Assembly: GCF_023055435.1 (NCBI RefSeq) | Contig: NW_025964372.1 | Coordinates: forward strand, 38,626,001-38,690,000 | Length of the DNA: 64,000 bases | From: Haliotis rufescens | Lineage: Eukaryota | Reading direction: 5' to 3' | Shown: positions 8,095 to 42,900 of the stretch, piece by piece | Layout: each line of letters opens with the position of its first letter | How positions within the stretch are numbered: the stretch's first letter is position 1 | Translations under genes and position numbers: made by a program | Notes under the pieces: model-generated | Told to the model about the DNA's origin: nothing | What the model saw: the letters and a program-made list of their open reading frames with translations, nothing else | Database searches by the model: none

Positions 8095-8127
<33 letters not shown>

Positions 8128-8935
8128 TCGCTCTCTCTCTCTCCGTGCCTCTCTTTGTCTCTCTATTTGTGCTTCTCTCAAGCTGTGTTTCCCTGTCTTT
8201 TGTGTGTGTGTGTGTCTCTCTCTCTCCGTGCCTCTCTTTGTCTCTCTATTTGTGCCTCTCTCTAGCTGTGTTTCTCTGTCTTTTGTGTGTGTGTGTCTCT
8301 CTCTCTCCGAGCCTTTCTTTGTCTCTCTATCTGTGCCTCTCTCTAGCTGTGTTTCTCTGTCTCTTGTGTGTGTGTGTGTCTCTCTCTCTCCGTGCCTTTC
8401 TTTGTCTCTCTATCTGTGCCTCTCTCTAGCCGTGTTTCTCTGTCTCTTGTGTGTGTGTGTCTCTCTCTCTCTCCGAGCCTTTCTTTGTCTCTCTATCTGT
8501 GCCTCTCTCTAGCTGTGTTTCTGTCTTTTGTGTGTGTGTGTCTCTCTCTCTCCATGCCTCTCTTTGTCTCTCTATTTGTGCTTCTCTCAAGTTGTGTTTC
8601 TGTCTTTTGTGTGTGTGTGTCTCTCTCTCTCCATGCCTCTCTTTGTCTCTCTATTTGTGCCTCTCTCTAGCCGTATTTCTCTGTATCTTGTGTGTGTGTG
8701 TCTCTCTCTCTCTCCGTGCCTTTCTTTGTCTCCCTATCTGTGCCTCTCTCTAGCCGTGTTTCTCTGTCTCTTGTGTGTGTGTCTCTCTCTCTCCATGCCT
8801 CTCTTTGTCTCTCTATTTGTGCCTCTCTCTAGCCGTATTTCTCTGTCTCTTGTGTGTGTGTGTCTCTCTCTCTCTCCGTGCCTTTCTTTGTCTCCCTATC
8901 TGTGCCTCTCTCTAGCCGTGTTTCTCTGTCTCTCA
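8060..8935. repeat. ~65-bp minisatellite built from (CT)n and (GT)n tracts
   Basis: About 13 units of GTGTGTCTCTCTCTCCGTGCCTYTCTTTGTCTCTCTATYTGTGCCTCTCTCTAGCYGTGTTTCTCTGTC. Confidence 0.9.
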
Positions 8936-10679: not shown

Positions 10680-13045
10680 AAAAGTGATGTTACCCCGTGG
10701 TATAGTTTCCCCAGTACATCTTTCAAAACGTTGTTACCCCGTGGTATAGTTTCCCCGGGACATCTGTCAAAACGTTGTTACCCCGTGGTATAGTTTTCCC
10801 GGGACATCTTTCCCTAACATTGTATGTCCCTGTCGAGTTTCCCGCGTAAACTTTCCCTATCCTTGTTACCTATTGGTATAGTTTCTCGGTATAGCTTTCC
10901 CTAACGCTGTTACCTTTGGGTATAGTTCCTCGGTATAGCTTTCCTTAACGTTGTTACCTTTTGGTATAGTTTCTCGGTATAGCTTTCCTTAACGTTGTTA
11001 CCTTTTGGTATAGTTTCTCGGTATAGCTTTCCCTAACGTTGTTACCCCGTGGTATAGTTTCTCGGTATAGCTTTCCCTAACGTTGTTACCTTTTGGTATA
11101 GTTTCTCGGTATAGCTTTCCCTAACGTTGTTACCTTTTTGTTTCCCTGTATAACTTTCACTAACGTTGTTACCCCTTGGTATAGTTTCTCTTTATAGCTT
11201 TCCCTAACGTTGTTACCTATTGGTATAGTTTCTCGGTATAGCTTTTCCTAACGTTGTTACCCCTTGGTATAGTTTCTCGGTATAGCTTTCCCTAACGTTG
11301 TTACCCCTGGGTATAGTTTCTCGGTATAGCTTTCCCTAACGTTGTTACCTTTTGGTATAGTTTCTCGGTATAGCTTTCCCTAACGTTGTTACCCCTTGGT
11401 ATAGTTTCTCGGTATAGCTTTCCCTAACGTTGTTGCCCCGTGGTATAATATTTCGGTATAGCTTTCCCAAACATTGTTACTCCAGGTCGATTTTCCCGAG
11501 TAAAACTTTCCCTATTGTTTTTACCCTTTGGTATAGTTTCTCGGTATAGCTTTCCCAAACATTGTTACTCCAGGTCGATTTTCCCGAGTAAAACTTTCCC
11601 TAATGTTGTTACCTTTTGGTATAGTTTCCCTGTATAACTTTCCCTAACGTTGTTACCCCTGGGTATAGTTTCCAGGTATAGCTTTACCTAACGTTGTTAC
11701 CCCTGGGTATAGTTTCCCTGTATACCTTTCCCTAACGTCGTTACCCCTGGGTATAGTTTCCCTGTATAACTTCCCCTAACGTTGTTACCCCTGGGTATAG
11801 TTTCCCTGTATAACTTTCCCTAACGTTGTTACCCCTGGGTATAGTTTCCAGGTATAGCTTTACCTAACGTTGTTACCCCTGGGTATAGTTTCCCTGTATA
11901 CCTTTCCCTAACGTCCTTACCCCTGGGTATAGTTTCCCTGTATAACTTTCCTAACGTCGTTACCCCTGGGTATAGTTTCCCTGTTTAACTTTCCCTAACG
12001 TTGTTATCCCTGGGTATAGTTTCCAGGTATAGCTTTACCTAACGTTGTTACCCCTGGGTATAGTTTCCCTGTATACCTTTCCCTACCGTCGTTACCCCAG
12101 GGTATAGTTTCCCTGTATACCTTTCCCTAACGTCGTTACCCCTGGGTATAGTTTCCCTGTATAACTTTCCCTAACGTTGTTACCCCTGGGTATAGTTTCC
12201 AGGTATAGCTTTACCTAACGTTGTTACCCCTGGGTATAGTTTCCCGGTATACCTTTCCCTACCGTCGTTACCCCTGGGTATAGTTTCCCTGTATAACTTT
12301 CCCTAACGTTGTTATCCCTGGGTATTGTTTCCCGGTATAACTTTCCCTAACGTTGTAACCCCTGGGTATAGTTTCCCGGTATAGCTTTCCCTAACGTTGT
12401 GACACCTGGGTATAGTTGCCCGGTATAGCTTTCCCTAACGTTGTTACCCCTGGGTATAGTTTCCCGGTATATCTTTCCCTAATGTTGTCACCCATGAGTA
12501 TAGTTTCCCGGTATAACTTTCCCTAACGTTGTTATCCCTGGGTATAGTTTCCCGGTATAACTTTCCCTAACGTTGTTACCCCTGGGTATAGTTTCCCGGT
12601 ATAACTTTCCCTAACGTTGTTATCCCTGGGTATAGTTTCCCGGTATAACTTTCCCTAACGTTGTTATCCCTGGGTATAGTTTCCCGGTATAACTTTCCCT
12701 AACGTTGTTACCCCTGGGCATAGTTTCCAGGTACATCTTTCCCTAATATTGTTATACCTGATAAAGTGTCCCCGGTTTAGCTTTCCCTAACATGTTATTT
12801 TATGGTATAGATTCACGGTATAGCTTTCACAAATATTGTTACTTGATAGTATAGTTTACCGGTATAGCTTTCACTAATATTGTTATCCCTGGGTATAGTT
12901 TCCCGGTATAACTTTCCCTAACGTTGTGACCCCTTGGTATAGTTTCCAGGTACTTCTTTCCCTAACATTGTTACCCCTGGGTATAGTTTCCAGGTACATT
13001 TTTCCCTAACATTGTTACCCCTGGGTTTATTTTCCCCGGTTAATC
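10680..13045. repeat. 44-bp minisatellite (~53 units)
   Basis: Unit TTACCCCTGGGTATAGTTTCCCGGTATARCTTTCCCTAACGTTG; period checked at 12541/12585. Confidence 0.95.
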
Positions 13046-13529
13046 TTTCCTTTCTCCTGAATTCAGTACAGACATGTCACCTTCGTTCAAAACCTAAATG
13101 CAATAGCTTCATAGATATAGAAATTTAATATATGTTGATTTCATTTTAATCAAATATATATGGTTGTCCCGGAATTAATATACACTGAAGCTCGCGGGAT
13201 GAACTCGGCCATCTGTGGAGCCTGGATCAATTGCAGACGAAATGAGTGTAATGATATATTTCGTATATATTGCTAATGCTAATGACAATAGGGCTGACCA
13301 ACAGTTGACCAGGCATGTTATTTGACATGAAATGCAACTTGGGGTATTATTTGTGAGTACGCTGCTTTAATTTCAAAATACATTTATTAAAATTGCACAC
13401 AAAGCTAACACTAAAAGACCTTTTTTCATGATGCGCTTCATTAGAATTAACATTCAGTGGGATAGACAACATCTTGTCAAATATACGAGATGAATATAAC
13501 AGTCGTATTTATAACAAAGCCATGGCAGG

Positions 13530-13573
13530 GTCACGTGATTTCCTCAGTCACAATGTGGGCCTCTGCTATAAAG
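13530..13573 (+). promoter_or_regulatory. Candidate core promoter of FABP-like gene 2: E-box GTCACGTGAT (13530-13539) and TATAAAG (13567-13573)
   Basis: TATA lies ~95 nt upstream of ATG 13665; the E-box is palindromic and of bHLH-ZIP type. Confidence 0.55.
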
Positions 13574-13664
13574 GGTTAACGAGACTATACGTGAATCACA
13601 TGCCAGCCCACCTCACTAGCTCTTCGCTGTGCTGTTTGTTTGCATCGATACCTAAATCAGTATA

Positions 13665-16600
13665 ATGGCTGCGACGCTAGGCAAGTGGCAGTGCTGCCCT
13701 GAGCTCACGACGGGATTCGCGGACTTTATGGACGCTATCGGTGAGTGGTTATTATCATAACTGTTTTGTTAATTTTTTAAAGATTGAAAATATGTTTAAT
13801 ATATCATCGTCACTTTTAACATGAATTAATCATGTTAAATTGCCTATATTTCAAATATAATTTCGGCGTTTTATAGGTACAGTTTATCAACACAAAATAT
13901 CCAACTTAAACATAATTAAAAATCTGAAAAGGACCTGAATTCCTATAAACGCTATAGCTCTACTATATTTTACGCGGATAAGGCCTGCTGGCGAACATCT
14001 TCAGGCGAATGTCAACGTGTGAATTACAACGGTACAGTACACTCTGGAGAGTTGGAAACATACATAAAACGACAGAGAGGGTAAATTTCACTTTTTTATT
14101 TCGTGACAAGCGTTTGGATTATTAAAAAAAACGGTGCAATAATCTTTTTTTACAAGAAACGAAACGACTGTTTTAGATAAAACTTCGGATAAATGACACA
14201 GAGGCAATCATGACGGTGGTTACAGGATACAGGTTGGATGATGCATATATGCTTTAAAATATTACATAATGCCAAAAAATTACATCATCCGAAAATAAGC
14301 CAGCAGGTTATTGGGCTATTTATAACGTCAAAAGATGTTGGAAATGTTATGTAATGGCATGTCGACTGACTCACAATGTCCCGTCGTGTTGTGCGTGGTG
14401 TGTGTGGGCCTAGAAAACAACGAGTGAACTTGAGTCAATATTCAGGCAAGTTGTTATGGTGGAAGAACGGGATAACAAACAGGTTTCACTCTGACGCTCG
14501 ACAAATCATGTGAGCTCAGTTCGTCTGCCTGGAACTTAGATAGAGGACACAACATTTCCCCAACACCGACCTGACATGGCCGCGTAGTGTCAACAAGGCC
14601 ACTGCCCCGTCAACGACAGCAGGTAGGAATCCCCGTAATAGGTGATAGCGTTCATAGGGATGCATTTTTGAAAATGAATTTGGTTTTCATTAACCAAGAT
14701 TAAGGTATTTTAATTATCTAGGTTGTGAAAATAATCCCGATAAAGTTGAAATCTGGAAAACAAATTCATACATTTTTTTAACAAATTTCCAGATTTGTGT
14801 TTTGACTTGATCCGACATCTTCCCGAGGCAAGCGTTTCCACATACCTGTATCAAATCTTAGTTTCTGTTTTCGATACGAGACTTTGATAAATGGCTAGTG
14901 GACGCTCTTGCCTCTGGAAGATGTTGATCCGACTGCTCGGATATGGTGTGGTGCCCAAGTCGTCTAAGGCGCCGCGATTCCCTGTGCAGAGTTGCGTCCC
15001 TTGGGCACACCAGAAACCTATGATTGTGGGTTCGAATCACCGGTTCGCCACGATTATGGTTCTAGGTTTGTCAGCACCATACCCGTGCTCGTGGATTTCA
15101 CCGAAGTGGTAAACGTCTGAGACCTGCATCACTTCGGGCTTTCCTCCCACTTTAAGCTGACACGCCGGAATACTATTAAAAGCGGCGTTAAACCCAACGC
15201 ACTCTCTCACTCGTATGTGTGATGGTACTTAGCAGATATCTTTATTTCTACCGCTACTTTTTCGGGGGAGTTCAGTCTAACGTGAATACTTGACCGGGAG
15301 AGTTTCTCAGTGAATTTAAATAAGATAGATACTTTAGCCTCACTGACATTCGTGTCTGCAAGTATAGTTTGCATCCAGTTTGCTAGATTTGCCGTGGTCT
15401 TAATGTAGCAGCCATCTCCCCTCGCTCACACCAACTTTGCTAGTCTTGCCCTGGTCTTAATCTTGCAGAGATCTCCCCTCGCTCACATCCAGTTTGCTAG
15501 GCTTCGTCCCGGTCTTAATCTAGCAGTGATCTCCCCTCGCTTACATCCAGGTTGCTAGGCTTGCCCTGGTCTTAGCCTAGCAGAGATCTCCCCTCGCTTA
15601 CATCCAGGTTGCTAGGCTTGCCCTGGTCTTAATCTAGCAGAGATCTCCCCTCGCTCACATCCAGTTTGCTAGACTTGCCCTGGTCTTAATGAAGCAGAGA
15701 TCTCCCCTCGCTTACATCCAGTTTGCTAGGCTTGCTCTGGTCTTAATGTAACAGCGATCTCCCCTCGCTTACATCCAGTTTGCTAGGCTTCGTCCTGGTC
15801 TTAATGTAGCAGAGATCTCCCTTCGCTTACATCCAGGTTGCTAGGCGTGTCCTGGTCTTAATCTAGCAGAGGTCTCCCCTCGCTTACACCCAGGCTGCTA
15901 GGCGTGCCCTCGTCTTAATGTAACTGCGATCTCCCCTCGCTTACATCCAGGTTGCTAGGCTTGCTCTGGTCTTAATCTAGCAGAGATCTCCCCTCGCTTA
16001 CATCCAGGTTGCTAGATTTGCCGTGGTCTTAATGTAGCAGCCATCTCCCCTCGCTCACACCCAGTTTGCTAGTCCTGCCCTGGTCATAATGTAACAGCGA
16101 TCTCCCCTCGCTTACATCCAGTTCGCTAGGCTTCGTCCTGGTCTTAATCTAGCAGAGATCTCCCCTCGCTTACATCCAGGTTGCTAGGCGTGTCCTGGTC
16201 TTAATCTAGCAGAGATCTCCCCTCGCTTACATCCAGGCTGCTAGGCTTGCCCTGGTCTTAGTCTAGCAGAGATCTCCCCTCGCTTACATCCAGGTTGCTC
16301 GGCTTGCCCTGGTGTTTATCTAGCAGCGGTCTTACCTCACGCTTACATCAACTTTGCTAGAATTGCAGTGGTTTAAATCTTGCAGCGATCGTCCTCTCGT
16401 AACAAATGTTATATTTGGGATAACACTTTCTGAGTAAAGTACAGATTCTCGTACCTTTTTGGGTTGAGTCCCGTCCAAAATTCGAACCCACACTGCCAGA
16501 GTAAGGCACCTAGTTGCCAGCGCACAAAGTCAGCGATCTAACCCACTCAGCCACCGAGGCTTCCACAAAAATGAAAGTCCCACAACATTACTGGTAGTCT

Positions 16601-19600
16601 AGATCACGTACTTTGTGTACCCCTCTGACAAGTGTAAATCTGTACTTTAGTGTAATCCCAAATGTAACATTTGTTACCTCTGACCACTTTCTAAATGGCA
16701 TTGTGTGTTGATCGTCCTCTCGTTTACATCAAATTTGCGAGACTTGTCCTGGTCTAAATCTAGTAATGATCTTCTTCTTGGTTAAACACAGACTTGCTCT
16801 GGTCTAAATACAGCTTCGGTCTCCCTCTCTCTTACACTCGGATTGGTAAACTTGCCCGAGTCTATATCTAGCATCGGTCTCCTCTCGCTTAAACAAATTT
16901 CCAAGACGTGACGTGGTGTAGATATAGCATCGATCTTCCATCAAGGAATCAAGGTTGCTAGACTTGATCAATTGTACATACTAATAAATCTCGATTGATA
17001 ATATGGCCGTTTAATCTGGAGACGAATCGAATCTAATTTCTGGCGGTTTTGTTTTATAACAGGGGCATTGGATGAAGAGCGGAAGGCATCCCAGGGTTCG
17101 CCATTCACAATGGAGATGTCCCGTGACGGTGACACTTGGGACGTGGACGTGTTTTACCCAAACAACGCAGCTTTCTCCCGGAAATACTCGTTTAAGTCCG
17201 GCGTGGAGTTCAACTACCCCGGACACTCCCCTGGCCACGCAGTGACGGTAGGTAGACGTTCCCCTGGCCACACAGTGTCCGTAGGTAGACGTTCCCCTGG
17301 CCACGCAGTGACTGTAAGTAGACGTTCCCCTACCCACACAGTGACTGTAAGTAGATGTTCCCCTAGCCACACAGTGACTTTAAGTAGATGTTCCCCTAGC
17401 CACGCAGTGACTGTAAGTAGACGTTCTCCTGGCCACACAGTGACTGTAAGAAGACGTTCCCCTAGCCACTCAGTGACTGTAAGTAGACGTTCCCCTAGCC
17501 ACACAGTGACTGTAAGTAGATGTTCCCCTAGCCACGCAGTGACTGTAAGTAGATGTTCCCCTAGCCACACAGTGACTCTAAGTAGATGTTCCCCTAGCCA
17601 CACAGTGACTGTAAGTAGACGTTCTCTTGGCCGCGCAGTGACTGTAAGTAGATGTTCCCGTGGCCACACAGTGACTGTAAGTAGACGATCCCATAGCCAC
17701 ACAGTGACTGTAAGTAGATGTTCCCCTAGCCACAAGTGACTGTAAGTAGACGTTCTCCTGGCCACACAGTGACTGTAAGTAGACGTTCTCCTGGCCACAC
17801 AGTAACTGTAAGTAGACGTTCTCCTGGCCACACAGTGACTGTAAGTAGACGTTCCCCTAGCCACACAGTGACTGTAAGTAGATGTTCCCCTAGCCACACA
17901 GCGACTGTAAGTAGATGTTCCCCTAGCAACACAGTGACTGTAAGTAGATGTTCCCCTAGCCACACAGTGACTTTAAGTAGATGTTCCCCTAGCCACGCAG
18001 TGACTGTAAGTAGACGTTCTCCTGGCCACACAGTGACTGTAAGAAGACGTTCCCCTAGCCACTCAGTGACTGTAAGTAGACGTTCTCCTGGCCACACAGT
18101 AACTGTAAGTAGACGTTCCCCTAGCCACACAGTGACTGTAAGTAGATGTTCCCCTAGCCACACAGTGACTGTAAGTAGACGTTCCCCTGGCCACACAGTG
18201 ACTGTAAGTAGACGTTCTCCTGGCCACGCAGTGACTGTAAGTAGACGTCCCGCTAGCCACACAGTGACTGTAAGTAGATGTTCTCCTGGCCACACAGTGA
18301 CTGTAAGTAGATGTTCCCCTAGCATTACAGTGACTGTAAGTAGACGTTCTCCTGGCCACACAGTGACTGTAAGTAGACGTTCCCCTAGCCCCACAGTGAC
18401 TGTAAGTAGACGTTCCCCTAGCCACACAGTGACTGTAAGTATACGTTTTCCTGGCCACACAGTGACTTTAAGTAGACGTTCCCCTGACCACACAGTGACT
18501 GTAAGTAGACGTTCTCCTGGCCACACAGTGACTCTAAGTAGACGTTCCCCTAGCCACACAGTGACTGTAAGTAGAAGTTCCCCTAGCCACACAGTGACTG
18601 TAAGTAGACGTTCCCCTAGCCACACAGTGACTGTAAGTAGACGTTCCCCTAGCCACACAGGGGCTGTAAGTAGATGTTCCCCTAGCCACACAGTGACTGT
18701 AAGTAGATGTTCCCCTGGCCACACAGTGACTGTAAGTAGACGTTCCCCTGGCCACGCAGTAATAGTAAGGGGACGTTCTCCTGGCCACACAGTGACTGTA
18801 AGTAGACGTTCCCCTAGCCACACAATGACTGTAAGTAGATGTTCCCCTAGCCACACAGTGACTGTAAGTAGATGTTCCCCTAGCTACACAGTGACTGTAA
18901 GTAGACGTTCCCGTGGCCACACAGTGACTATAAGTAGACGTTCCCCTAGCCACAGAGTGACTATAAGTAGACTTTCTCCTGGCCACACAGTGACTGTAAG
19001 TAGACGTTCCCCTAGCCACACAGTGACTGTAAGTAGACGTTCTCCTGGCCACACAGTGACTGTAAGTAGACGTTCCCCTAGCCACACAGTGACTGTAAGT
19101 AGATGTTCCCCTAGCCACACAGTGACTGTAAGTAGACGTTCTCCTGGCCACACAGTGACTGTAAGTAGACGTTCCCCTAGCCACACAGTGACTGTGAGTA
19201 GATGTTCCCCTAGCCACACAGTGACTGTAAGTAGACGTTCCCCTGGCCACACAGTGACTGTAAGTAGACGTTCTCCTAGCCACGCAGTGACTGTAAGTAG
19301 ACGTTCCCCAAGCCACACAGTGACTGTAAGTAGACGTTCCCCTAGCCACACAATGACTGTAGAATACGTTCCGCTAGCCACACAGTGACTGTAAGTAGAT
19401 GTTCCCCTAGCCACACAGTGACTGTAAGTAGACGTTCCCGTGGCCACACAGTGACTGTAAGAAGACGTTCTCCTGGCCACGCAGTGACTGTAAGTAGACG
19501 TTTTCCTGGCCACACAGTGACTGTAAGTAGACGTTCCCCTAGCCACACAGTGATGTGAAGTAGACGTTCTCCTGGCCACATAGAGACTGTAAGTAGACGT

Positions 19601-22600
19601 TCCCCTAGCCACACAGTGACTATAAGTAGACGTTCCCCTAGCCCCACAGTGACTGTAAGTAGACGTTCCCCTAGCCACACAGTGACTGTAAGTATACGTT
19701 TTCCTGGCCACACAGTGACTTTAAGTAGACGTTCCCCTGACCACACAGTGACTGTAAGTAGACGTTCTCCTGGCCACACAGTGACTCTAAGTAGACGTTC
19801 CCCTAGCCACACAGTGACTGTAAGTAGACGTTCCCCTAGCCACACAGTGACTGTAAGTAGACGTTCCCCTAGCCACACAGTGACTGTAAGTAGACGTTCC
19901 CCTAGCCACACAGGGGCTGTAAGTAGATGTTCCCCTAGCCACACAGTGACTGTAAGTAGATGTTCCCCTGGCCACACAGTGACTGTAAGTAGACGTTCCC
20001 CTGGCCACGCAGTAATAGTAAGGGGACGTTCTCCTGGCCACACAGTGACTGTAAGTAGACGTTCCCCTAGCCACACAATGACTGTAAGTAGATGTTCCCC
20101 TAGCCACACAGTGACTGTAAGTAGATGTTCCCCTAGCTACACAGTGACTGTAAGTAGACGTTCCCGTGGCCACACAGTGACTATAAGTAGACGTTCCCCT
20201 AGCCACAGAGTGACTATAAGTAGACTTTCTCCTGGCCACACAGTGACTGTAAGTAGACGTTCCCCTAGCCACACAGTGACTGTAAGTAGACGTTCTCCTG
20301 GCCACACAGTGACTGTAAGTAGACGTTCCCCTAGCCACACAGTGACTGTAAGTAGATGTTCCCCTAGCCACACAGTGACTGTAAGTAGACGTTCTCCTGG
20401 CCACACAGTGACTGTAAGTAGACGTTCCCCTAGCCACACAGTGACTGTGAGTAGATGTTCCCCTAGCCACACAGTGACTGTAAGTAGACGTTCCCCTGGC
20501 CACACAGTGACTGTAAGTAGACGTTCTCCTAGCCACGCAGTGACTGTAAGTAGACGTTCCCCAAGCCACACAGTGACTGTAAGTAGACGTTCCCCTGGCC
20601 ACACAATGACTGTAGAATACGTTCCGCTAGCCACACAGTGACTGTAAGTAGATGTTCCCCTAGCCACACAGTGACTGTAAGTAGACGTTCCCGTGGCCAC
20701 ACAGTGACTGTAAGAAGACGTTCTCCTGGCCACGCAGTGACTGTAAGTAGACGTTTTCCTGGCCACACAGTGACTGTAAGTAGACGTTCCCCTAGCCACA
20801 CAGTGATGTGAAGTAGACGTTCTCCTGGCCACATAGAGACTGTAAGTAGACGTTCCCCTAGCCACACAGTGACTATAAGTAGACGTTCTCCTGACCACAC
20901 AGTGACTGTAAGTAGACGTTCCCCTAGCCACACAGTGACTGTAAGTAGACGTTCTCCTGGCCACACAGTGACTGTAAGTAGATGTTCCCCTAGCAACACA
21001 GTGACTGTAAGTAGACGTTCTCCTGGCCACACAGTGACTGTAAGTAGACTTCTCCTGGCCACACAGTGACTGTAAGTAAATATTCCCCTGACCACACAGT
21101 GACTGTAAGTAGACGTTCTCCTGGCCACACAGTGACTGTAAGTAGACGTTCCCCAAGCCACACAGTGACTGTAAGTAGACGTTCCCCTGGCCACACAGTG
21201 ACTGTAAGTAGACGTTCCCCTGGCCACACAGTGAATGTAAGTAGACGTTCCCCTAGCCACACAGTGACTGTAAGTAGACGTTCTCCTGGCCACACAGTGA
21301 CTGTAAGTAGACGTTCCCCTAGCCACACAGTGACTGTAAGTAGACGTTCCCCTGGCCACACAGTGACTGTAAGTAGACGTTCTCCTGGCCACACAGTGAC
21401 TGTAAGTAGACGTTCCCCTAGCCACACAGTGACTGTAAGTAGACGTTCTCCTGGCCACACAGTGACTGTAAGTAGACGTTCCCCTAGCCACACAGTGACT
21501 TTAAATAGACGTTCCCCTAGCCACACAGTGACTGTAAGTAGACGTTCTCCTGGCCACGCAGTGACTGTAAGTAGACGTTCTCCTGGCCACGCAGTGACTG
21601 TAAGTAGATGTTCCCCTAGCAACACAGTGAATGTAAGTAGACGTTCTCCTGGCCACACAGTGACTGTAAGTAGACGTTCCCTAGCCACACAGTGACTGTA
21701 AGTAGACGTGTTCCTAGCCACACAGTGACTGTAAGTAGATGTTCCCGTGGCCACAAGTGACTGTAAGTAGACGTTCCCCTGGCCTCGCAGTAATAGTAAG
21801 TAGACGTTCTCCTGGCCACACAATGACTGTAAGTAGACGTTCCCCTAGCCACACAATGACTGTAAGTAGACGTTCCCCTAGCCACACAGTGACTGTAAGT
21901 AGATGTTCCCCTAGCCACACAGTGACTGTAAGTAGACGTTCCCGTGGCCACACAGTGACTGTAAGTAGACGTTCTCCTGGCCACACAGTGACTGTAAGTA
22001 GACGTTCTCCTGGCCACACAGTGACTGTAAGTAGACGTTCCCCTAGCCCCACAGTGACTGTAAGTAGACGTTCCCCTAGCCACACAGTGACTGTAAGTAT
22101 ACGTTTTCCTGGCCACACAGTGACTTTAAGTAGACGTTCCCCTGACCGCACAGTGACTGTAAGTAGACGTTCTCCTGGCCACACAGTGACTCTAAGTAGA
22201 CGTTCCCCTACCCACACAGTGACTGTAAGTAGACGTTCCCCTAGCCACACAGTGACTGTAAGTAGACGTTCCCCTATCCACACAGTGACTGTAAGTAGAC
22301 GTTCCCCTAGCCACACAGGGGCTGTAAGTAGACGTTCCCCTAGCCACACAGTGACTGTAAGTAGACGTTCCCCTAGCCACACAGTGACTGTAAGTAGACG
22401 TTCTCCTGGCCACACATAGACTGTAAGTAGACGTTCTCCTGGCCACACAGTGACTGTAAGTAGACGTTCTCCTGGCCACGCAGTGACTGTAAGTAGACGT
22501 TCTCCTAGCCACACAGTGACTGTAAGTAGACGTTCCCCTAGCCACACAGTGACTGTAAGTAGACGTTCCCCTGGCCACACAGTGTCGGTAGGTAGACGTT

Positions 22601-25600
22601 CCCCTGGCCACACAGTGACTGTAAGTAGACGTTCCCCTAGCCACACGGTGACTGTAAGTAGACGTTCCCCTAGCCACACGGTGACTTTAAGTAGATGTTC
22701 CCCTAGCCACACAGTGACTGTAAGTAGACGTTCACCTAGCCACACAGTGACTGTAAGTAGACGTTCCCCTAGCCACACAGTGAATGTAAGTAGACGTTCC
22801 CCTAGCCACACAGTGACTGTAAGTAGATGTTCCCCTGGCCACACAGTGACTGTAAGTAGACGTTCCCCTGGCCACACAGTGACTGTAAGTAGACGTTCCC
22901 CTGGCCACGCAGTAATAGTAAGTAGACGTTCTCCTGGCCACACAGTGACTGTAAGTAGACGTTCCCCTAGCCACACAATGACTGTAAGTAGACGTTCCCC
23001 TAGCCACACAGTGACTGTAAGTAGATGTTCCCCTAGCCACACAGTGACTGTAAGTAGACGTTCTCCTGGCCACACAGTGACTGTAAGTAGACGTTCCCCT
23101 AGCCACACAGTGACTGTAAGTAGATGTTCCCCTAGCTACACAGTGACTGTAAGTAGACGTTCCCGTGGCCACACAGTGACTGTAAGTAGACGTTCTCCTG
23201 GCCACGCAGTGACTGTATGTAGACGTTCTCCTGGCCACGCAGTGACTGTAAGTAGACGTTCCCCTAGCCAAACAGTGACTGTAAGTAGACGTTTCCCTAG
23301 CCACACAGTGACTGTAAGTAGATGTTCCCCTAGCCACGCAGTGACTGTAAGTAGACGTTCCCCTGGCCACACAGTGACTGTAAGTAGACGTTCTCCTGGC
23401 CACACAGTGACTGTAAGTAGACGTTCCCCTGGCCACACAGTGACTGTAAGTAGACGTTCCCCTGGCCACACAGTGACTGTAAGTAGACGTTCCCCTAGCC
23501 ACACAGTGACTGTAAGTAAATATTCCCCTGACCACACAGTGACTGTAAGTAGACGTTCTCCTGGCCACACAGTGACTGTAAGTAGACGTTCCCCTAGCCA
23601 CGCAGTGACTGTAAGTTGACGTTCCCCTGGCCACGCAGTGACTGTAAGTATACCTCATGATCATCGGAAATAAATTACGAGGGGACTCATGTAAGGCGAG
23701 GCATGGCATATGCTACAAGGCGTCACGGTTGCATTGAGACGACACGCAGCTTCGAGTACTGATGATTCCGCCGCTTGTTTCAAACATGTGAGTGAGTGGG
23801 TGAGTGAGTGAGTGAGTGAGTGAGTGAGTATGGTTTTACGCCGCTTTTAGCACTATTCAGGCAATATCACGGCGGGGAAACCACCCATGTTGGTAATCGA
23901 CCCCGGGTCTTCGGCGTGACGCGCGAACGCTGTAACCACGAGGCTCCCCCGCCACCTTCAATCGTGAAATAACATTATAAATTAATTTGATGTCAACGTT
24001 ATTTTTCGCCTCGTGTCAATCGATCCTGATTGAAAACAAAGGTATGGTGGATAACAGATCCAAGGTATTCATCATAACAGATCTGACATTTATTACACTG
24101 GTAAATCGAGGAAGTAATTACATTACTTAACGTCAAATGAACAAAATTACTTTTAATGAAATAAAATAATGCGCGTGATTAGATGTTCTTGTAATCACGG
24201 ACAATTATCATCGCCGCAAATTAACGGTTGTTTTTGTATATTTAGACTACGTTCCTCCCTTACTTACGGAAGCCCATTAGGGCCATCTATATCATTTGTA
24301 TTCTTGAAAACTGAAGATGCTAATTTGAAAATTCAAGCTACCATGTTGATGATACTGTTTAAAATTCGTAATACCTTTTTGAATTAAAGATATTAAACTA
24401 ATGCTTTAACATTGTTATTGGACTAGTACCTTGGACTTTCACCATACTATCTTGAAATGTGAATATATAACCTTTACATTTGAACATCCTATCTAGTTTT
24501 TTTCTATTATTTTGTTTAAGAAGATATCGCCTTGCTCGTATCCCGTACTTTCTCGTGAATACACGTGGTGTCGTATCTATTTTTAGTAAGCCCATGAAAA
24601 GAGACCGTTCATTATTCTGGGATTTCAAATGAGCACTGATCCTTGCAAGATCCGTGTGCGATGCGTGTCACGGCGGGGGACACCAGAAAATGGGCTTCAC
24701 ACATTGTACCTATGTCGGGAATCGAACCCGGGTCTTCGGCGTGACGAGCGAACGCTTTGAACACTAGGCTACCTGACCGCCCCCGATGCGTAGAGTACAT
24801 ATTGATAAGCGCGAAGAATTACCGTTTGTGCATCTTCCCGAGGCAAGAGAGTTAACTGACTTTAAAAGTCCAGTTTCCACCCTTGCCGAACTAGGCTGGT
24901 ATTATGGAGTCACAGTTTGGCTGCACTAACGAGTCTATGCATAGTTCAATCAAAATCTCGCAACAAAATCGAAATTCGGTTTGAAAACTGTCTTGCACAT
25001 TTCGGTCGATTGCAGGATTTGCAAAGCATGTGCACCGCCAACTCGTTGTCAACAGATATTTTCCAAACCTTTTAATGATTTTAATCAAGGTGCTCGCATG
25101 ATTTGATGCACTTCGCGATGTAAGACCCGTTTTATCACAATATAGATCTTGAGTATCGATCGGATCGTCTTGACTGGGCGCCGCCATTTTTTTGGAAACA
25201 AATGCAAGTGATGGAATCTGATTGGTCCATAGGAGAGGCTTAGAAGGGACATAACTCGTAATAACCACGGGTGGCGTTACGATCGAGCCCAGGAATTCCA
25301 GCCTAGTTCGGCAAGGGTGGCAACTGGACTTTTAAAGTCAGTTAACTCTCTTGCCTCGGGAAGATGCCGTTTGTGATCTGTAAGTGTGAGCTCTCATTGG
25401 TCGAAGTACTGGAAGGCCTACCTCTCGTTGGAACCAGGCTTTTCCGGACGTATGTATTCGCGGGTGATGGGGGGAAGGCAGTGTATAGGTACCTGGGAAG
25501 TATTACCGATGGTACAATTATCTGTGACTATGTTCTGAATTGTCAGGGCGTGGTCGTAGTCGACGGTGACGTGCTGACCAGCAAGATGAAGTTTTCGATC

Positions 25601-26465
25601 GATGGCGAGGTGAAGCGGGAGTGGGAGACAGACACACGGGTAGTCGGAGACTACCTGGAATACGTGAGTATTTATTTATTGTTTGTTTGTTGTTTAACGC
25701 GCACTCACCAATATTCCAGCTGTATGAGGGCGGCCTGTAAACAGTCAGACATTCCTGTGATTGACATCATGAGCATAGATCTATGCAATTGGGATATGAT
25801 GGCATGCATCAATCAAGTCAAGGAGTCTGACAACACGACCCCGTAGTCGCTTCTTACAAAATTCATGGGAGTATTTAATAAATCTGATATTTGGCAACGC
25901 GAATCACATTCTGTTTCCTTCAACCTCAGATTAAACGAAAAGAGTTACAAAAAGAAAAAACGAGGGAAAAAACGATAAAAAACTACTTAGATTGCCTAAG
26001 CATGATAATTCAACGGAAGATGCGACTTAATTGATGCGTGGTCAAACTCACTGACTTGGTTGATTGCGTGTCATCGTATCTCGGCGGGGTGGAAGGTTGC
26101 TCATAATATCCATCACTGGTTTGTCTGATGATTTACAGGCGCCGTCCTATAAGTGGAATATTGCTGAATCAGCAAACAGAAATACAATAACTTTCAATGT
26201 CACGGCGTAGGAGCAGTGGGTGGGTTTGACGCCGCTCTGGACAATGTCAGCTTAATCTGGGAGTAAAGGCTAAATCGACGCAGGATATCTGGGTTTTTTT
26301 CTTTAAAAAACATTGTTCCCGAAAATGCTTGAATGAAATAATGTGTGCTCTGGTTTTAAACCGAAACGTTCTGCCAGGCGTATATGACATTTGTCCCATT
26401 TATTGTTTCTTCAGAAAAGCATATTCAAGGGAAAGGAGATGGTTCACAAGCTAAAGAAGATATGA
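13665..26465 (+). CDS. FABP-like lipid-binding protein, 4 exons (13665-13740, 17063-17247, 25547-25663, 26415-26465), 142 aa
   Basis: Spliced product: MAATLGKWQCCPELTTGFADFMDAIG/ALDEERKASQGSPFTMEMSRDGDTWDVDVFYPNNAAFSRKYSFKSGVEFNYPGHSPGHAVT/GVVVVDGDVLTSKMKFSIDGEVKREWETDTRVVGDYLEY/KSIFKGKEMVHKLKKI*. It has the GxW motif, DGDTW and FKxGxEF, the canonical FABP intron phases 1,0,0 and GT-AG boundaries. AATAAA at 26703-26708. Confidence 0.88.
14816..14923. mobile_element. 108-bp mini-MITE of the CATCTTCC family in FABP intron 1
   Basis: 17-bp TIR; perfect 9-bp TSD TTGATCCGA. Confidence 0.85.
14950..15212 (+). mobile_element. SINE family C
   Basis: Close homolog of 5258-5490 with the same tail. 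Confidence 0.8.
15370..16970. repeat. 57-bp minisatellite, interrupted at ~16405-16705 by a tRNA-like repeat (family E)
   Basis: Unit CTTACATCCAGGTTGCTAGGCTTGCCCTGGTCTTAATCTAGCAGAGATCTCCCCTCG; degenerate after 16710. Confidence 0.9.
17228..23652. repeat. 33-bp minisatellite (~195 units) derived from the FABP exon2/intron2 junction
   Basis: Unit TCCCCTAGCCACACAGTGACT|GTAAGTAGACGT; the first unit is the true exon end. Confidence 0.97.
23789..23955 (-). mobile_element. SINE family A, internally deleted
   Basis: Same head and tail as the 9804 copy. Confidence 0.8.
24667..24783 (-). mobile_element. SINE family A, tail-less
   Basis: Homology to the 9804 copy. Confidence 0.8.
24831..25366. mobile_element. 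MITE with CATCTTCC termini, ~65-bp TIRs and 9-bp TSD
   Basis: Near-perfect TIRs; TSD CCGTTTGTG (24822-24830, 25367-25375). Confidence 0.9.
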
Positions 26466-27014
26466 CGTGTTTGCACGGGCTCCGCGTGAGATTTAGGAGC
26501 ATGCACTCGTCTCACCTAGACATTGGTCACGTGCTAACGCTGCCGAGAATCGAACTGAAAGAAATTGCCGACATTTCTGCCTTCTGTGTTTTCTCAAATA
26601 TCGAATCTATGCAAACGTGTGTTCATAAATATGCATACGCTTATTGTCTGTCATACTTTAAGATGTCTAGTTCTACGAAGACATTTTGCTTATGAAGATA
26701 TCAATAAAATCGACTTGCATGTATACTGTTATATTCATGTAATTGTGTTTTACTATGCAGAAGAAAATGAATAGGTAGAACCTGACGCTGGAGCTATCTG
26801 TCCAAGTTTGCAACGATACTAATTCATTTCCTCGTGGGTGGGTCTCTCACCCTTGTTTCAAAATGCCTATGATTTTTTATGACGTCACTTCGAGTGTTTT
26901 GGGTGTACATGTATAGGCCAGACAAATGTAATTACATTTTTACGGATTCTAATCGCAAATACCTTAAGGAAAGAGGGAAAAACTAAACATAAAAATAGCT
27001 TTTGGTTTTAATGA

Positions 27015-27285
27015 AGCAGCGATCCGGTTTGCTAGACTTGCCCTGGTCTAAATCGATCAGCGATCACTCCTCACTTACATCCAGTTTGCTAGACTTGCCT
27101 TGGTCTTTATCTAGCTGCGATCTCCCCTCGCTTACATCCAGGCTGCTAGACTTGCCCTGGTCTTTATCTAGCTGCGATCTCCCCTCGCTTACATCCAGGC
27201 TGCTACCCTTGCCGTGGTCTAAATCTAGCAGCGACCGTCCTCTCGTTTACATCAAATTTGCTTGAATTGTCCTGGTCTAAAAATA
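27015..27285. repeat. Second array of the 57-bp repeat (~4-5 units)
   Basis: Same unit as 15370-16970. Confidence 0.85.
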
Positions 27286-28131
27286 TAGCAAAAAGCAATT
27301 GTTATATTATGACTGAATTCTTCTTTTGTTTAGTGAAACGCTGTCCGTTCGCTTCAGGTGAAGTCTTCATTGAGCAGGTTGTCAACATGCCAGTGTAACT
27401 GCTCACTTGGACTGTATACAATGGCTAAAACCAGACAGGTGTGTTTCTTGTATATAAAACGTTAACGCCGGACAGTAAACAGTCTTGATAGTCCGTGGAA
27501 ACTGGTTCCAGTTGGCGTAAAAGGCAAAATAGCTGTGAAAAATATATGAATGGATTACTGAAGATCAGTGATGACACCAGGTGTTCGCGAAAAGGTTAAC
27601 CTGTCCTGTCCTACCTTTAGCAAGTAATAAAACAAGTGAGTGATTGAGTATGGTTTTACGCCGCTTTTAGCAATATTCCAGCAATATCACGGCTTGGGAC
27701 ACCAGAAAGTAACTGCATCAGTCTGACTTAACAAACATTTGGAAAGATGGTATTTTTATGCAAATGGTAACGTAATTCCAGGTCTTGATAGGCTGGATAG
27801 AAAGCTCCATCGTTGCGTGTGAAGTCTGTAAAACACGGAACGGACGCCCCCCACCGCTAGTCAGTTTTATTGACATCACATTGTGTAGACGTGTTGTTAG
27901 TTGGTATTGTGTGCTATGTGCCATTGTTAAATAAACACGTGAATATATATAAAATATTTTAGGCTTTTTGCTGCCTGGAAGTGCTTTGGTACTGCATTCC
28001 GATCGTGATGAATGTTGATGCATGTCAGTAGACTGCAGGCCGTGTCTCGATACAGCGTCTGCTCGGAGAGGGAAAATCGGTGGTTCATGCCAGAAATATG
28101 TTGAAAAATGGTACTTAGGGCATTAAACAAT

Positions 28132-39900: not shown

Positions 39901-42900
39901 TGTTTCCAAGCACAGTACCTGGACTACAAAAGCAAATTAATCAGCTGGAATGTTATTGCAAAGCAAAGAATGGAATTTATCTGTCAACAAGAATAAAACA
40001 AAAGTTATTGTTTTTAAAAATGGTGGTACACTAGCCAGAAGGGAGAAATAGTTTTATCAAGGACATTCATTAGATGTTGTATCGTCCTATAAGTTCTTAG
40101 GTGTATATTTTACAAATAGATTGTCATGGAAGATGCATGCTAACCAGGCTGCTGTACAAGCTAAGAAGATCCTAATTGGAATTCTTCAACATATGAAAGT
40201 TCTTGGAAATATAACCTATAATACATTCTTTAAGATTTTCGATACAAAAATAAGCCCAATTTTGTTATATGGAGCAGAAGTTTGGGGATTAGAAATGATT
40301 GATGTTATAGAAAAAGTACATTTATATGCATGCAAAAGAGTCCTTGAAGTGAAACCTAGTACGTCTGATCTAATGGTCTATGGAGAATGTGGAAGATACC
40401 CATTAACTATGTTTGCAAAGTTAAAGAAGATAAAATACTTGATTAAATTAGTTAAAATGCCTGCAAAAAGATATCTAAAGAATTGTTATAACGTGTTATT
40501 ACTCTATGATCAACAAGGACAGGCTAACTGGGCATCTTCTGTTAAGCATCAACTTTATTCATATGGTTACGGTAATATATGGACAGAACAGGATACGTAT
40601 ATACCAAATCATTTCAAAGATGCTTTCACTCAGACACTGAAAGATATGTACATTCAAAATTGGCATTTTTCCTGATCAGTATCAAAGAAACTATCAAGTT
40701 ATTCCCTCTTTAAAAACAGCTTCCGTGGAGAGCAACAATACGTATTAGATTAAAAACATTTCGAATTGCACTTGCAAGATTCAGATGCGGTTCACACGAA
40801 CTCTTTATAGAGACGGAAAGATATATGGGGATCGTGAGAGAACACAGAATTTGTCAGTTTTGTGATTTAAACACTAGAAAATGAATACCATTTCTTACTT
40901 CTTTGTCCCTTGTATGCTGAACTCAGAAAACAGTTTATTGATAAATATTATATCCGTTATCCAAGTCTACAGAAATGTGTTACATTAATGTCAAGTAAGA
41001 ATTTAGCAATAACGAAAAAGCTGTCAATGTACATATTGCATGCTATGAAGCTAAGAAGTTCCAAATGTGTTACCTTTTAAATGTATATGCACCCATTACT
41101 ATGTAACATGTACTATAGGCCTGTGGTCTCTCAGTATCATGAATAAACACATATACGTGAGGGATGCTGTTTTTACGAAACTGGTGATAATAATTCGTGT
41201 ATTTCCCTCGTTCTCGCTCGGGAAATACAATATTGTTTCTTTGTTTGTTGTTTAACGACACACAATATTCTAGCCAAATGACAAGAATTCTGACAGTCAT
41301 AACGTTTAATCTGTATGACACACATGCTCGTGTAATTATATATATTGTTAATGAGCGAGGTGATTAAAAATATGTGTATAATAATAGTTTCACCTGCTTC
41401 TCATCATTTTTGACATTATCCAAATACCATCGTGACGTGATTTATGACCACAATAGTAATGACGTCATAGCAAATAATTTTTGACGTCATATTGACTCTG
41501 TTAGCACTGCAAGACGTTTTCAGTATAGAAAACTATCCATGTGCTACATCTGATTGATAAAGTGTGGATAATAACAGGGAGTATTATATATATGTGTGTT
41601 TCTACTGATTTAGAAAACAGGCGATGCTCAGGAAATAGAACTGCAGATACTCGTTTTGTGAAAATGGTTCCACTCATATACCATTCTGTTTCGACTTGTT
41701 ATTCTCTGGTTTTGACCTTTTATACATGACACCTTTTCATAGCCGATTAAACAAAACACATTGATATCTCATTGACCTGGAGGATTTTTAATCTTTCCGT
41801 TTTACATGTTTCTGTACAAACGAGTATAAAGTATTTCAAATCATTTGCAATATGTTTTTGTTATTTGTTAATAGTTGCGATATTAGAGTATTTTGGTTTG
41901 ATTGATTTATTGACTTCCGGATTTCTGTATTAGGTTGGATTTTGTTTCCCTAAAATTCTGAGGAATAAGTACAAGTACTTTTTGAGCCAAATTGAACTTG
42001 AATATATTATTCGGTTGGTCAGACTTGTTGACTGTGTTGATAACATGTCATCGTATCCCGATTTCGTGGATCGATATTTATGATTTTAATCACTGGATTG
42101 TCTGGCCCGGGATCATGTAGCTGGAATATTGCTGAGTGCGGCCTTAAACAAAATAATCCTGAATTAATTGAATTAATGAATTAAGGATTATCAATCATCG
42201 GAATTAACATGGGATTATTTATCGTATCGCTGGAAATGCGTTGTCGTTGAAGTTGTAAGCAGTAGTGTATTTGTCAATGAAATTCATCTATTTCAGTTTT
42301 GCAAAATGGAAACAGATCACAGCACCAAAGTACATGGACATTGTGAAGATATTCATCAACTGGCAGTGAGTTCACAATGACATACGGAGCTTCTCTTTCC
42401 GACGTTAGGCGATGCTACTTTGCAATGCATAATTCCAACTTCTTCATTCACAGAAAATAAGTAAAACAATAAAATCATTAAGATGTTATTATAAAACTTA
42501 CTAATGTTGTTTTCCATGGCCAATAGCGGAATATGAAATACCTGAAGAAATGTCTGTAGCATGTCATGTGCCTCTTCCATTCCGTACCATGTCATGTCAC
42601 GACTTTATCATGTTATGTTCTCTTCTCCTCCATTCGTACCCTCTCCTCTGTACCACCTCATGTCCTCTTCTCCTTCGTTATGTATATTGTCATGACTGTA
42701 CGCCATTCCGTGACATGTCTTGTCATCTTCGCCGCCTCTGTGTACCATGTCCTCTCTCACGTCATGTCCTCTTCCATTCTCTACCATGTCATGACTTCTC
42801 ATCTATTGTTTACAACTTCAAGACCTCTTCTCCATTGTATAAAATGTCATGTCCCCTCCTCGTCTCCTCCAGTCTCTATGACGTAATATCCGCGTCTCCT

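What the first reader, a model, noticed from the sequence alone, without database searches (positions are those of the whole stretch)
17228..23652. 6.4-kb minisatellite made from an amplified splice donor: a ladder of in-frame 5' splice sites in a FABP gene
Seen: the 33-bp unit is the last ~21 nt of FABP exon 2 plus the first ~12 nt of intron 2. The native donor is ACG|GTAGGT (17248), while most of the ~195 copies carry ACT|GTAAGT, a perfect +1..+6 consensus. The unit is 11 codons (VSRRSPSHTVT) and stays open in the exon frame until a 2-nt deletion gives TGA at 17737-17739. About a dozen intact donors at 17248+33k would therefore splice in phase 0 to exon 3. Established: FABP intron 2 falls near the betaE-F turn of the ligand portal. 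Inference: the array could give isoforms with n x 11-aa basic Arg/Ser inserts, act as a U1 snRNP decoy or NMD rheostat, or tune expression by VNTR length.
Basis: partly seen in the sequence, partly recalled or inferred. Interest (0 to 1): 0.9.

Follow-up and report, generated by a model that had tools for sequence, protein, structure and literature searches.

The report
Splice-donor minisatellite in abalone FABP-like gene
A 6.4-kb array of about 195 copies of a 33-base exon/intron junction really sits in intron 2 of an abalone fatty-acid-binding-protein-like gene, but the mRNA seen uses only the original, first splice donor, as in the known boundary minisatellites of human F7 and of amphioxus.

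Summary
A 33-bp x 194.8 tandem array lies at 17227-23650. Its first unit is the last 21 nt of exon 2 plus the first 12 nt of intron 2. It holds 172 reiterated GT sites, 154 of them ACT|GTAAGT. The exon frame stays open to TGA at 17737. The host is a four-exon gene whose product is identical to Haliotis rufescens LOC124138447 (142 aa). It is a divergent but genuine FABP-fold protein, and intron 2 falls in strand F, just after the E-F loop.

The functional reading is not supported. RNA contigs from three runs (three studies, two species labels) join exon 1, exon 2 and exon 3 through the native donor (17247|25547). None of them covers the distinctive sequence just past it, which every downstream-donor isoform must contain. 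The array donors are also not stronger than the native one. They lose the G at -1, and predicted pairing with this genome's own U1 is -7.0 against -10.6 kcal/mol for the native site.

Boundary-spanning minisatellites with silent pseudo-donors are already described: human F7 IVS7, IFI6, CBS, LMNB2 and PDGFA, and the amphioxus 'mirages'. This is an unusually large new member of that kind. Low-level isoforms, NMD targets and a U1 decoy effect remain untested.

The parts
13567..13572 (+). TATAAA box about 25-30 nt upstream of the inferred transcript start
   Evidence: Read from the sequence. The X15 contig extends 154 nt 5' of the exon 2 junction, which puts the start near 13588.
13665..13740 (+). 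Exon 1 coding part (ATG to ATC G|GTGAGT), intron phase 1
   Evidence: tblastn of P0007 residues 1-26 at 100% identity; sequence. The loose end of the X15 contig before 17062 reads the end of exon 1.
15372..16399 (.). Unrelated 57-bp x 18 minisatellite in intron 1
   Evidence: TRF
17063..17247 (+). Exon 2 (185 nt, 61 codons plus 2 nt), encoding helix II to the first half of strand F
   Evidence: Translation; identical to P0007 residues 27-87; RNA contigs cover 17062-17248 with 0 mismatches.
17245..17253 (+). Native 5' splice site ACG|GTAGGT. This is the donor actually used.
   Evidence: X15 and X19 contigs end at 17248, and the X15 loose end continues into exon 3 sequence. U1 duplex energy -10.6 kcal/mol.
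17227..23652 (+). 33-bp minisatellite of about 195 units (82 distinct variants). Each unit is 21 nt of exon end plus 12 nt of intron start.
   Evidence: TRF; unit segmentation; unique in the genome.
17248..17739 (+). Part of the array that is open in the exon frame: 12 reiterated in-frame GT sites, then TGA at 17737-17739
18381..20886 (+). Two adjacent 1,253-bp blocks of 38 units each (18381-19633 and 19634-20886) that differ at 2 positions. Either a recent higher-order duplication or an assembly duplication.
23653..25546 (+). Unique remainder of intron 2, including (GTGA)n at 23788-23829
25547..25663 (+). Exon 3 (117 nt, 39 codons), acceptor cag|GGC, donor TAC|GTGAGT
   Evidence: Sequence; P0007 residues 88-126; the X15 loose end behind 17248 equals the start of exon 3.
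26415..26465 (+). Exon 4 coding part (KSIFKGKEMVHKLKKI plus TGA)
26703..26708 (+). AATAAA signal in the 3' UTR
   Evidence: Sequence

Best explanation
This is an intronic minisatellite of the 'mirage' or F7-IVS7 type. A 33-bp piece spanning the exon 2/intron 2 junction of an abalone FABP-like gene was duplicated in tandem. It then expanded to about 195 units by unequal exchange, including multi-unit blocks. The whole array is removed as part of intron 2. The spliceosome uses the first, exon-proximal donor (17247|17248), which is also the one that pairs best with U1. The roughly 170 downstream copies are silent pseudo-sites. Shown here: the array and its origin, the gene model, the FABP fold, use of the native donor in mRNA, and the weaker U1 pairing of the copies. 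Inferred: the mode of expansion, that the array has no function, and that first-site preference works as shown experimentally for F7.
For: Array anatomy.

Exon end not extended: paralogous exon 2 copies end at the same position, 19 residues after the FK.G motif.

Gene: the product is identical to P0007, H. rufescens LOC124138447. The RefSeq models of three Haliotis species all join ...SPGHAVT|GVV....

RNA:
- X15 has an 838-nt contig at depth 57, and X19 a 488-nt contig. Both cover 17062-17248 with no mismatch.
- In X15 the loose ends of that contig read the end of exon 1 and the start of exon 3.
- Depth is zero over the unique intron stretch 16779-17057, so these runs are RNA.
- Depth is zero over 17249-17268 in X15 and over 17275-17305 in X16 and X19. 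Any isoform from a downstream donor must contain these stretches.
- Only 61-63-nt collapsed repeat contigs at depth 4-13 are seen. That fits trace pre-mRNA summed over many copies.

U1: the genome's own U1 starts ATACTTACCTG. Duplex energy is -10.6 for the native site against -7.0 kcal/mol for 147 array sites.

Variation: the most variable unit positions are 3, 7, 13 and 31, two of them CpG sites (13 and 31). The donor G at +1 is itself lost in 10% of units, which argues against maintenance of the donors.

Genomic background: minisatellites are common here, with 7 arrays in 64 kb and others in paralog introns.

Precedent: in F7 IVS7 only the most upstream of identical donors is used, even when downstream copies are improved to a consensus value of 91 (PMC1557585). 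Amphioxus mirages do not disturb splicing (PMC3087553).
Against: The RNA evidence is from assembled contigs, which drop rare variants and give no counts, so isoforms below a few percent would be missed. Transcripts spliced from donors beyond 17737 carry a premature stop and could be removed by NMD, so they might be invisible at steady state. Tissue and condition coverage is unknown. No length polymorphism or expression correlation was examined. First-site preference was demonstrated in mammalian cells, not in molluscs.
Confidence: 0.8

Rival explanations
1. Isoform ladder. The first few in-frame pseudo-donors (17281, 17314, 17347 and so on) are used at a low level. This would give FABP-like proteins with n x 11-residue Arg/Ser-rich extensions of the E-F loop, as happens with the first two pseudo-sites of human IFI6 and CBS.
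For: Twelve in-frame GT sites lie before the first stop. The junction sits 4 residues after the E-F loop in the model, and the insert repeats the native SPGH.VT, so it would read as a longer loop. There is precedent for use of the two nearest pseudo-sites in IFI6 and CBS (PMC1557585).
Against: No RNA contig in three runs covers 17249-17268 or 17275-17305, although exon depth reaches 57. The first pseudo-site is TCC|GTAGGT, with no G at -1 and -7.0 kcal/mol. The annotated proteins of three species lack inserts.
Confidence: 0.08
2. Regulatory array. About 150 U1-binding sites in one intron act as a U1 sink or decoy, or divert a share of the pre-mRNA to out-of-frame donors that feed NMD. Array length would then set the output of the gene.
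For: There are 154 sites with contiguous +1..+6 complementarity. After 17737 every donor gives a premature stop. Trace array RNA is present in X15 and X16. The array is also multi-copy in the DNA of a second species label (X12 depth is 30-70 times the flank), so it is not ephemeral.
Against: There is no positive evidence. The array RNA level fits ordinary intronic background summed over copies. The donor G at +1 is among the more variable non-CpG positions. Similar arrays in F7, LMNB2, PDGFA and amphioxus are spliced out silently. The region is generally rich in minisatellites.
Confidence: 0.08
3. Assembly artefact. The array, or much of its length, is a mis-assembly.
For: Two adjacent 1,253-bp blocks differ at only 2 positions, a pattern that assemblers can create. 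Short-read DNA runs hold only 0.5-0.6 of the sampled words of 16900-17800.
Against: Twenty runs from eight studies hold part of the stretch. DNA of a second species label shows repeat units at 30-70 times single-copy depth right after the exon. There are 82 distinct unit variants with an ordered structure. Existence of the array is therefore secure; only its exact length is open.
Confidence: 0.04

Closest known systems
Human F7 intron 7 37-bp VNTR (Borensztajn et al. 2006, PMC1557585)
   Same: The first monomer spans the exon-intron boundary, the authentic donor is followed by reiterated donor copies, and only the most upstream site is used in mRNA.
   Different: F7 has 5-9 copies with only 4 bp of exon per unit, and the pseudo-sites are identical to the authentic site. 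Here there are about 195 copies with 21 nt of exon per unit. The unit is a multiple of 3 and open in frame. The copies differ from the authentic site (T for G at -1, A for G at +4) and pair less well with U1.
Human IFI6 (6-16) intron 2 and CBS intron 13 boundary minisatellites (as summarised in PMC1557585)
   Same: Tens of pseudo-donors (25 in IFI6; 15-20 repeats in CBS) lie behind the real one.
   Different: In those genes the two nearest pseudo-sites are used constitutively. Here no use was detected in RNA contigs.
Amphioxus 'mirages' (Adh3 and the globin genes BflGb6 and BflGb9; PMC3087553)
   Same: These are minisatellite-like tandem duplications of exon-intron boundaries in an invertebrate. 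Regular splicing is undisturbed, they show concerted evolution, and the edge units are excluded from homogenisation. Here units 1-2 keep GTAGGT while the interior is GTAAGT.
   Different: Mirages described there have a few units (3-6 in the globins) of 10-160 bp. This one has about 195 units and is in a mollusc.
Cytosolic fatty-acid-binding proteins / iLBP family (e.g. squid ReP1-NCXSQ, intestinal FABP)
   Same: The host protein has a ten-strand barrel with a helix-turn-helix lid, is 142 aa long, and is encoded by four exons with intron phases 1, 0, 0.
   Different: About 20% identity, below Pfam thresholds. Ligand-binding residues were not examined. The databases call it 'uncharacterized protein'.

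Membership tests
Boundary-spanning minisatellite (F7 IVS7 type / 'mirage') | A tandem array whose first monomer spans an exon-intron boundary | tested here: met
   The array starts at 17227, 21 nt inside exon 2, and the donor is at 17247|17248. The exon end lies at the same position as in paralogs.
Boundary-spanning minisatellite (F7 IVS7 type / 'mirage') | [quoted passage not shown] | tested here: met
   172 homologous GT sites, 154 of them ACT|GTAAGT.
Boundary-spanning minisatellite (F7 IVS7 type / 'mirage') | Regular splicing from the authentic (most upstream) site, with pseudo-sites silent or nearly so | tested here: met
   The X15 contig joins 17247 to 25547, and the X15 and X19 contigs both end at 17248. 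No RNA contig runs past the native donor in X15, X16 or X19. This is contig-level evidence only.
Boundary-spanning minisatellite (F7 IVS7 type / 'mirage') | Length polymorphism between alleles (VNTR) | not testable with these tools
   Only short-read contigs were available. Partial word shares in DNA runs are uninformative.
FABP / intracellular lipid-binding protein family | Ten-stranded antiparallel beta-barrel with an N-terminal helix-turn-helix | tested here: met
   AlphaFold2 model with pLDDT 84.8 has strands A-J and two helices. Foldseek gives TM 0.77-0.84 to iFABP, FABP3/4 and ReP1-NCXSQ, with E about 1e-8.
FABP / intracellular lipid-binding protein family | Significant sequence similarity to family members | tested here: met
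   phmmer against PDB: ReP1-NCXSQ 3.8e-5, Drosophila FABP 2.7e-4, insect FABP 4.6e-4. ESM Atlas neighbours are molluscan Lipocalin_7/FABP clusters at 0.93-0.94.
FABP / intracellular lipid-binding protein family | Match to Pfam PF00061/PF14651 above the gathering score | tested here: not met
   No lipocalin or FABP family is listed even at E<=10 for P0007 or P0006, nor for the single exons. The protein is too divergent for the profile.
FABP / intracellular lipid-binding protein family | Conserved four-exon structure with introns in phases 1, 0, 0 | tested here: met
   Exons of 76, 185, 117 and 51 nt of coding sequence, with phases 1, 0, 0 read from the sequence. That this is the canonical FABP gene structure rests on my own knowledge.
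FABP / intracellular lipid-binding protein family | Carboxylate-binding Arg/Tyr residues and lipid binding | not tested
   Residue-level comparison was not done. Binding needs an assay.

The most novel reading that the evidence does not exclude
The array is not inert. With about 150 U1-complementary sites in one intron, it would sequester U1 or divert a length-dependent share of transcripts to out-of-frame donors that NMD destroys, and occasionally to in-frame donors that lengthen the portal loop. Array length would then tune the output of this FABP-like gene. Taken together with the other boundary-seeded arrays noted in this genome, it would mean that abalone minisatellites preferentially arise at, and act through, splice sites.
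Probability: 0.08. Interest if true: 0.6.

Novelty: new member of a known kind. Interest (0 to 1): 0.3.

Why it matters
As it stands this is a tidy annotation result. A striking ladder of splice donors turns out to be a large 'mirage'-type intronic minisatellite that the spliceosome ignores. Its value is as a natural test case for 5' splice-site choice. Roughly 150 good donors lie downstream of a single authentic one, yet the exon-proximal site is the only one seen in use. That extends the F7 observation from 5-9 copies in mammals to about 195 copies in a mollusc. Here the authentic site is also the stronger U1 partner, so position and strength are confounded. If other boundary-seeded arrays in this genome hold up, abalone could be a good system for asking why minisatellites are born at exon-intron junctions.

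Tried and rejected
- Pfam on single exons and on the full-length orthologs gave no FABP hit. Family assignment came instead from the PDB sequence search and the fold.
- The whole-library HMMER search with exon 2 found one true relative (the H. rubra ortholog) and four spurious repeat proteins.
The orthologous introns of H. rubra and H. asinina could therefore not be fetched, and the age of the array could not be dated by synteny.
- Dispersed satellite or transposon origin is rejected, because the unit occurs only at this locus.
- A coding function for the long array ORFs on either strand is rejected. They follow from a 33-nt unit with stop-free frames, indels break them repeatedly, and mRNA does not contain them.
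- Rfam found nothing in 12000-28000.
- Paralog loci were checked for similar boundary arrays. None starts at the exon 2 donor.
- MaxEntScan is not installed, so I used U1 duplex energies instead.
The database protein P0007, identical to the four exon translations, was used instead.
Full report
**Observation**

Tandem Repeats Finder reports a single array at 17227-23650 with period 33, 194.8 copies, 90% matches and score 10282. Read directly, the first unit is TCCCCTGGCCACGCAGTGACG followed by GTAGGTAGACGT. The first 21 nt are the end of an exon and the next 12 nt are the start of the intron.

Segmenting the array gives 195 units, of which 82 are distinct variants; short deletions leave the array 9 nt short of 195 x 33. 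Among sites homologous to the donor there are 172 GT dinucleotides:
- 154 are ACT|GTAAGT.
- The native site is ACG|GTAGGT, with the G of GT at 17248 and the last exon base at 17247.
- In the exon frame the first stop is TGA at 17737-17739, created by a 2-nt deletion.
- Thirteen in-frame GT sites, the native one included, precede that stop. The sites at k=4 and k=10 are destroyed.

A DNA search of the whole 1.33-Gb assembly finds the unit only inside this array. It is a locus-specific minisatellite, not a dispersed satellite or part of a mobile element.

**The gene**

A whole-library HMMER search with the exon 2 peptide found one real relative, a 129-aa Haliotis rubra protein. A word-based search with that protein found a 142-aa Haliotis rufescens protein, LOC124138447, 'uncharacterized protein'.

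That protein (P0007) matches the window exactly in four pieces:

| Exon | Coordinates |
|---|---|
| 1 (coding part) | 13665-13740 |
| 2 | 17063-17247 |
| 3 | 25547-25663 |
| 4 (coding part) | 26415-26465 |

Intron phases are 1, 0, 0. The window is thus very probably red abalone.

P0007, which is identical to the exon translations, was used instead.

Evidence on family membership:
- Pfam does not recognise the protein.
- phmmer against PDB sequences gives squid ReP1-NCXSQ at 3.8e-5 and insect and intestinal FABPs at 1e-4 to 1e-2, over almost the full length.
- The ESM Atlas neighbours are molluscan FABP-like clusters.
- An AlphaFold2 model (pLDDT 84.8) has ten strands and a helix-turn-helix.
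- Foldseek matches FABPs with TM 0.77-0.84.

'FABP gene' is supported as 'divergent FABP-fold family member'. Intron 2 falls between T87 and G88. That is inside strand F (84-93), four residues after the E-F loop (79-83).

Eight paralogous exon 2 copies elsewhere on the chromosome end at the same position, 19 residues after the FK.G motif. The array has therefore not lengthened the exon. It was born from the exon's end.

**What the RNA shows**

Twenty public runs from eight studies hold part of 16900-17800, and six small ones look like transcriptomes. I laid three of these, plus one DNA-like run of a second species label, on 16500-17420.

- The three transcriptome runs have zero depth over the unique intron stretch 16779-17057, so they are RNA.
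- In X15 an 838-nt contig at depth 57 covers 17062-17248 without a mismatch. Its loose ends read the end of exon 1 on one side and GCGTGGTCGTAGTCGAC..., the start of exon 3, on the other.
- X19 has a 488-nt contig with the same two boundaries. X16 covers the exon in pieces.
- No RNA contig covers 17249-17268 in X15 or 17275-17305 in X16 and X19. Every isoform made from a downstream donor would have to contain that distinctive first-unit sequence.
- The only array signal is 61-63-nt contigs with 2-4 mismatches at depth 4-13. This is the size expected for a collapsed 33-nt cycle in a k=31 graph. It fits trace pre-mRNA summed over dozens of identical units.
- The RefSeq models of three Haliotis species also join ...SPGHAVT|GVV....

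These are contigs, so isoforms below a few percent, and NMD-sensitive products, cannot be excluded.

**Donor strength**

The genome's own U1 genes start ATACTTACCTG. Duplex energies against that 5' end:

| Site | Energy (kcal/mol) |
|---|---|
| Native ACG|GTAGGTAG | -10.6 |
| 147 array sites ACT|GTAAGTAG | -7.0 |
| First pseudo-site TCC|GTAGGT | -7.0 |

Against the consensus MAG|GURAGU quoted in PMC1557585, both site types match 7 of 9 positions. The copies gain A at +4 and lose G at -1. The authentic donor is therefore both the first and the better U1 partner.

**How the array evolved**

- Units 1-2 keep GTAGGT, while the interior is homogenised to GTAAGT. This is the usual exclusion of edge units from concerted evolution.
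- The most variable unit positions are 3, 7, 13 and 31. Two of them (13 and 31) are CpG sites.
- The donor G at +1 is lost in 10% of units, so it is no better kept than its neighbours.
- A 38-unit block is present twice in tandem (18381-19633 and 19634-20886) with 2 differences in 1,253 bp. Shorter unit runs recur elsewhere in the array. This points to unequal exchange of multi-unit blocks. For that one block, an assembly duplication is also possible.
- In the DNA of the second species label, depth over the first units is 30-70 times that of the single-copy flank. A multi-copy array exists there too.
- The window holds seven minisatellites, and paralog introns hold more, though none starts at a donor.

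**Comparison with what is known**

PMC1557585 describes exactly this arrangement. The human F7 IVS7 37-bp VNTR has a first monomer that spans the boundary and silent identical pseudo-sites. The paper lists IFI6 (25 pseudo-sites, the first two used), CBS, LMNB2 and PDGFA as further cases.

The same paper shows by mutagenesis that the most upstream functional site wins, even against downstream sites improved to a consensus value of 91.

PMC3087553 describes 'mirages' in amphioxus Adh3 and globin genes. These are boundary-spanning minisatellites that do not disturb splicing.

The present array meets the defining features I could test. Length polymorphism could not be tested.

Two unchecked first-reader notes from other parts of this genome report further minisatellites seeded on splice sites. 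I did not test them.

**Verdict**

This is a real and unusually large member of a known kind, about 195 units against 5-25 in the vertebrate cases. It is most likely a neutral intronic by-product that is removed with intron 2 (confidence 0.8). The isoform-ladder, decoy/NMD and artefact readings keep small probabilities.

Noticed in passing
window 18381-19633 and 19634-20886: Two adjacent 38-unit (1,253-bp) blocks of the array differ at only 2 positions (18576, 19344). This is either a very recent higher-order duplication or a duplicated block in the assembly.
   Followed up: partly
window 15372-16399 and 27022-27281: A 57-bp minisatellite (18 copies) lies in intron 1, and a related 4.5-copy array lies just downstream of the gene. 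This unit is therefore a dispersed family, unlike the 33-bp unit.
   Followed up: no
window 10688-13036: A 44-bp x 53.5 minisatellite ends about 530 bp upstream of the gene's TATA box. Further arrays lie at 8118-8933 (83 bp), 42857-43653 (32 bp) and 57766-59289 (39/80/158 bp). The region is very rich in minisatellites.
   Followed up: no
window 16500-16716: A high-copy interspersed repeat in intron 1. Summed contig depth is 1e5 or more in the DNA run X12 and hundreds to thousands in the RNA runs, with many rearranged joints. It is probably a transcribed SINE/MITE-like element.
   Followed up: no
window 17195: An A/C difference in run X16 changes AAG (Lys) to ACG (Thr) in exon 2 (...YSFKSG... 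to ...YSFTSG...). Thr is the residue in the H. rubra and H. asinina orthologs.
   Followed up: no
window 471-587; G000:C594:38625262-38625405 and 38619110-38619256: Paralogous FABP-like genes lie immediately upstream, forming a tandem cluster: exon 2 copies just before the window start and an exon 3-like stretch at 471-587. More paralog pairs lie at 14.1, 16.0 and 49.8 Mb on the same chromosome. The start of the window has four N runs (210-348, 646-926, 1184-1352, 46058-46218), which I left untouched.
   Followed up: partly
G000:C46:11179277-11242436 (L016-L018): U1 snRNA genes stand in a long tandem array with a 592-bp spacing. At least 42 identical-scoring copies were found.
   Followed up: no
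L004, L005, L006 (paralog loci): Three paralogs carry a 27-bp x 36 minisatellite in intron 1, and (CA)n or other microsatellites lie shortly after exon 2. Intronic tandem repeats are a recurrent feature of this gene family.
   Followed up: no
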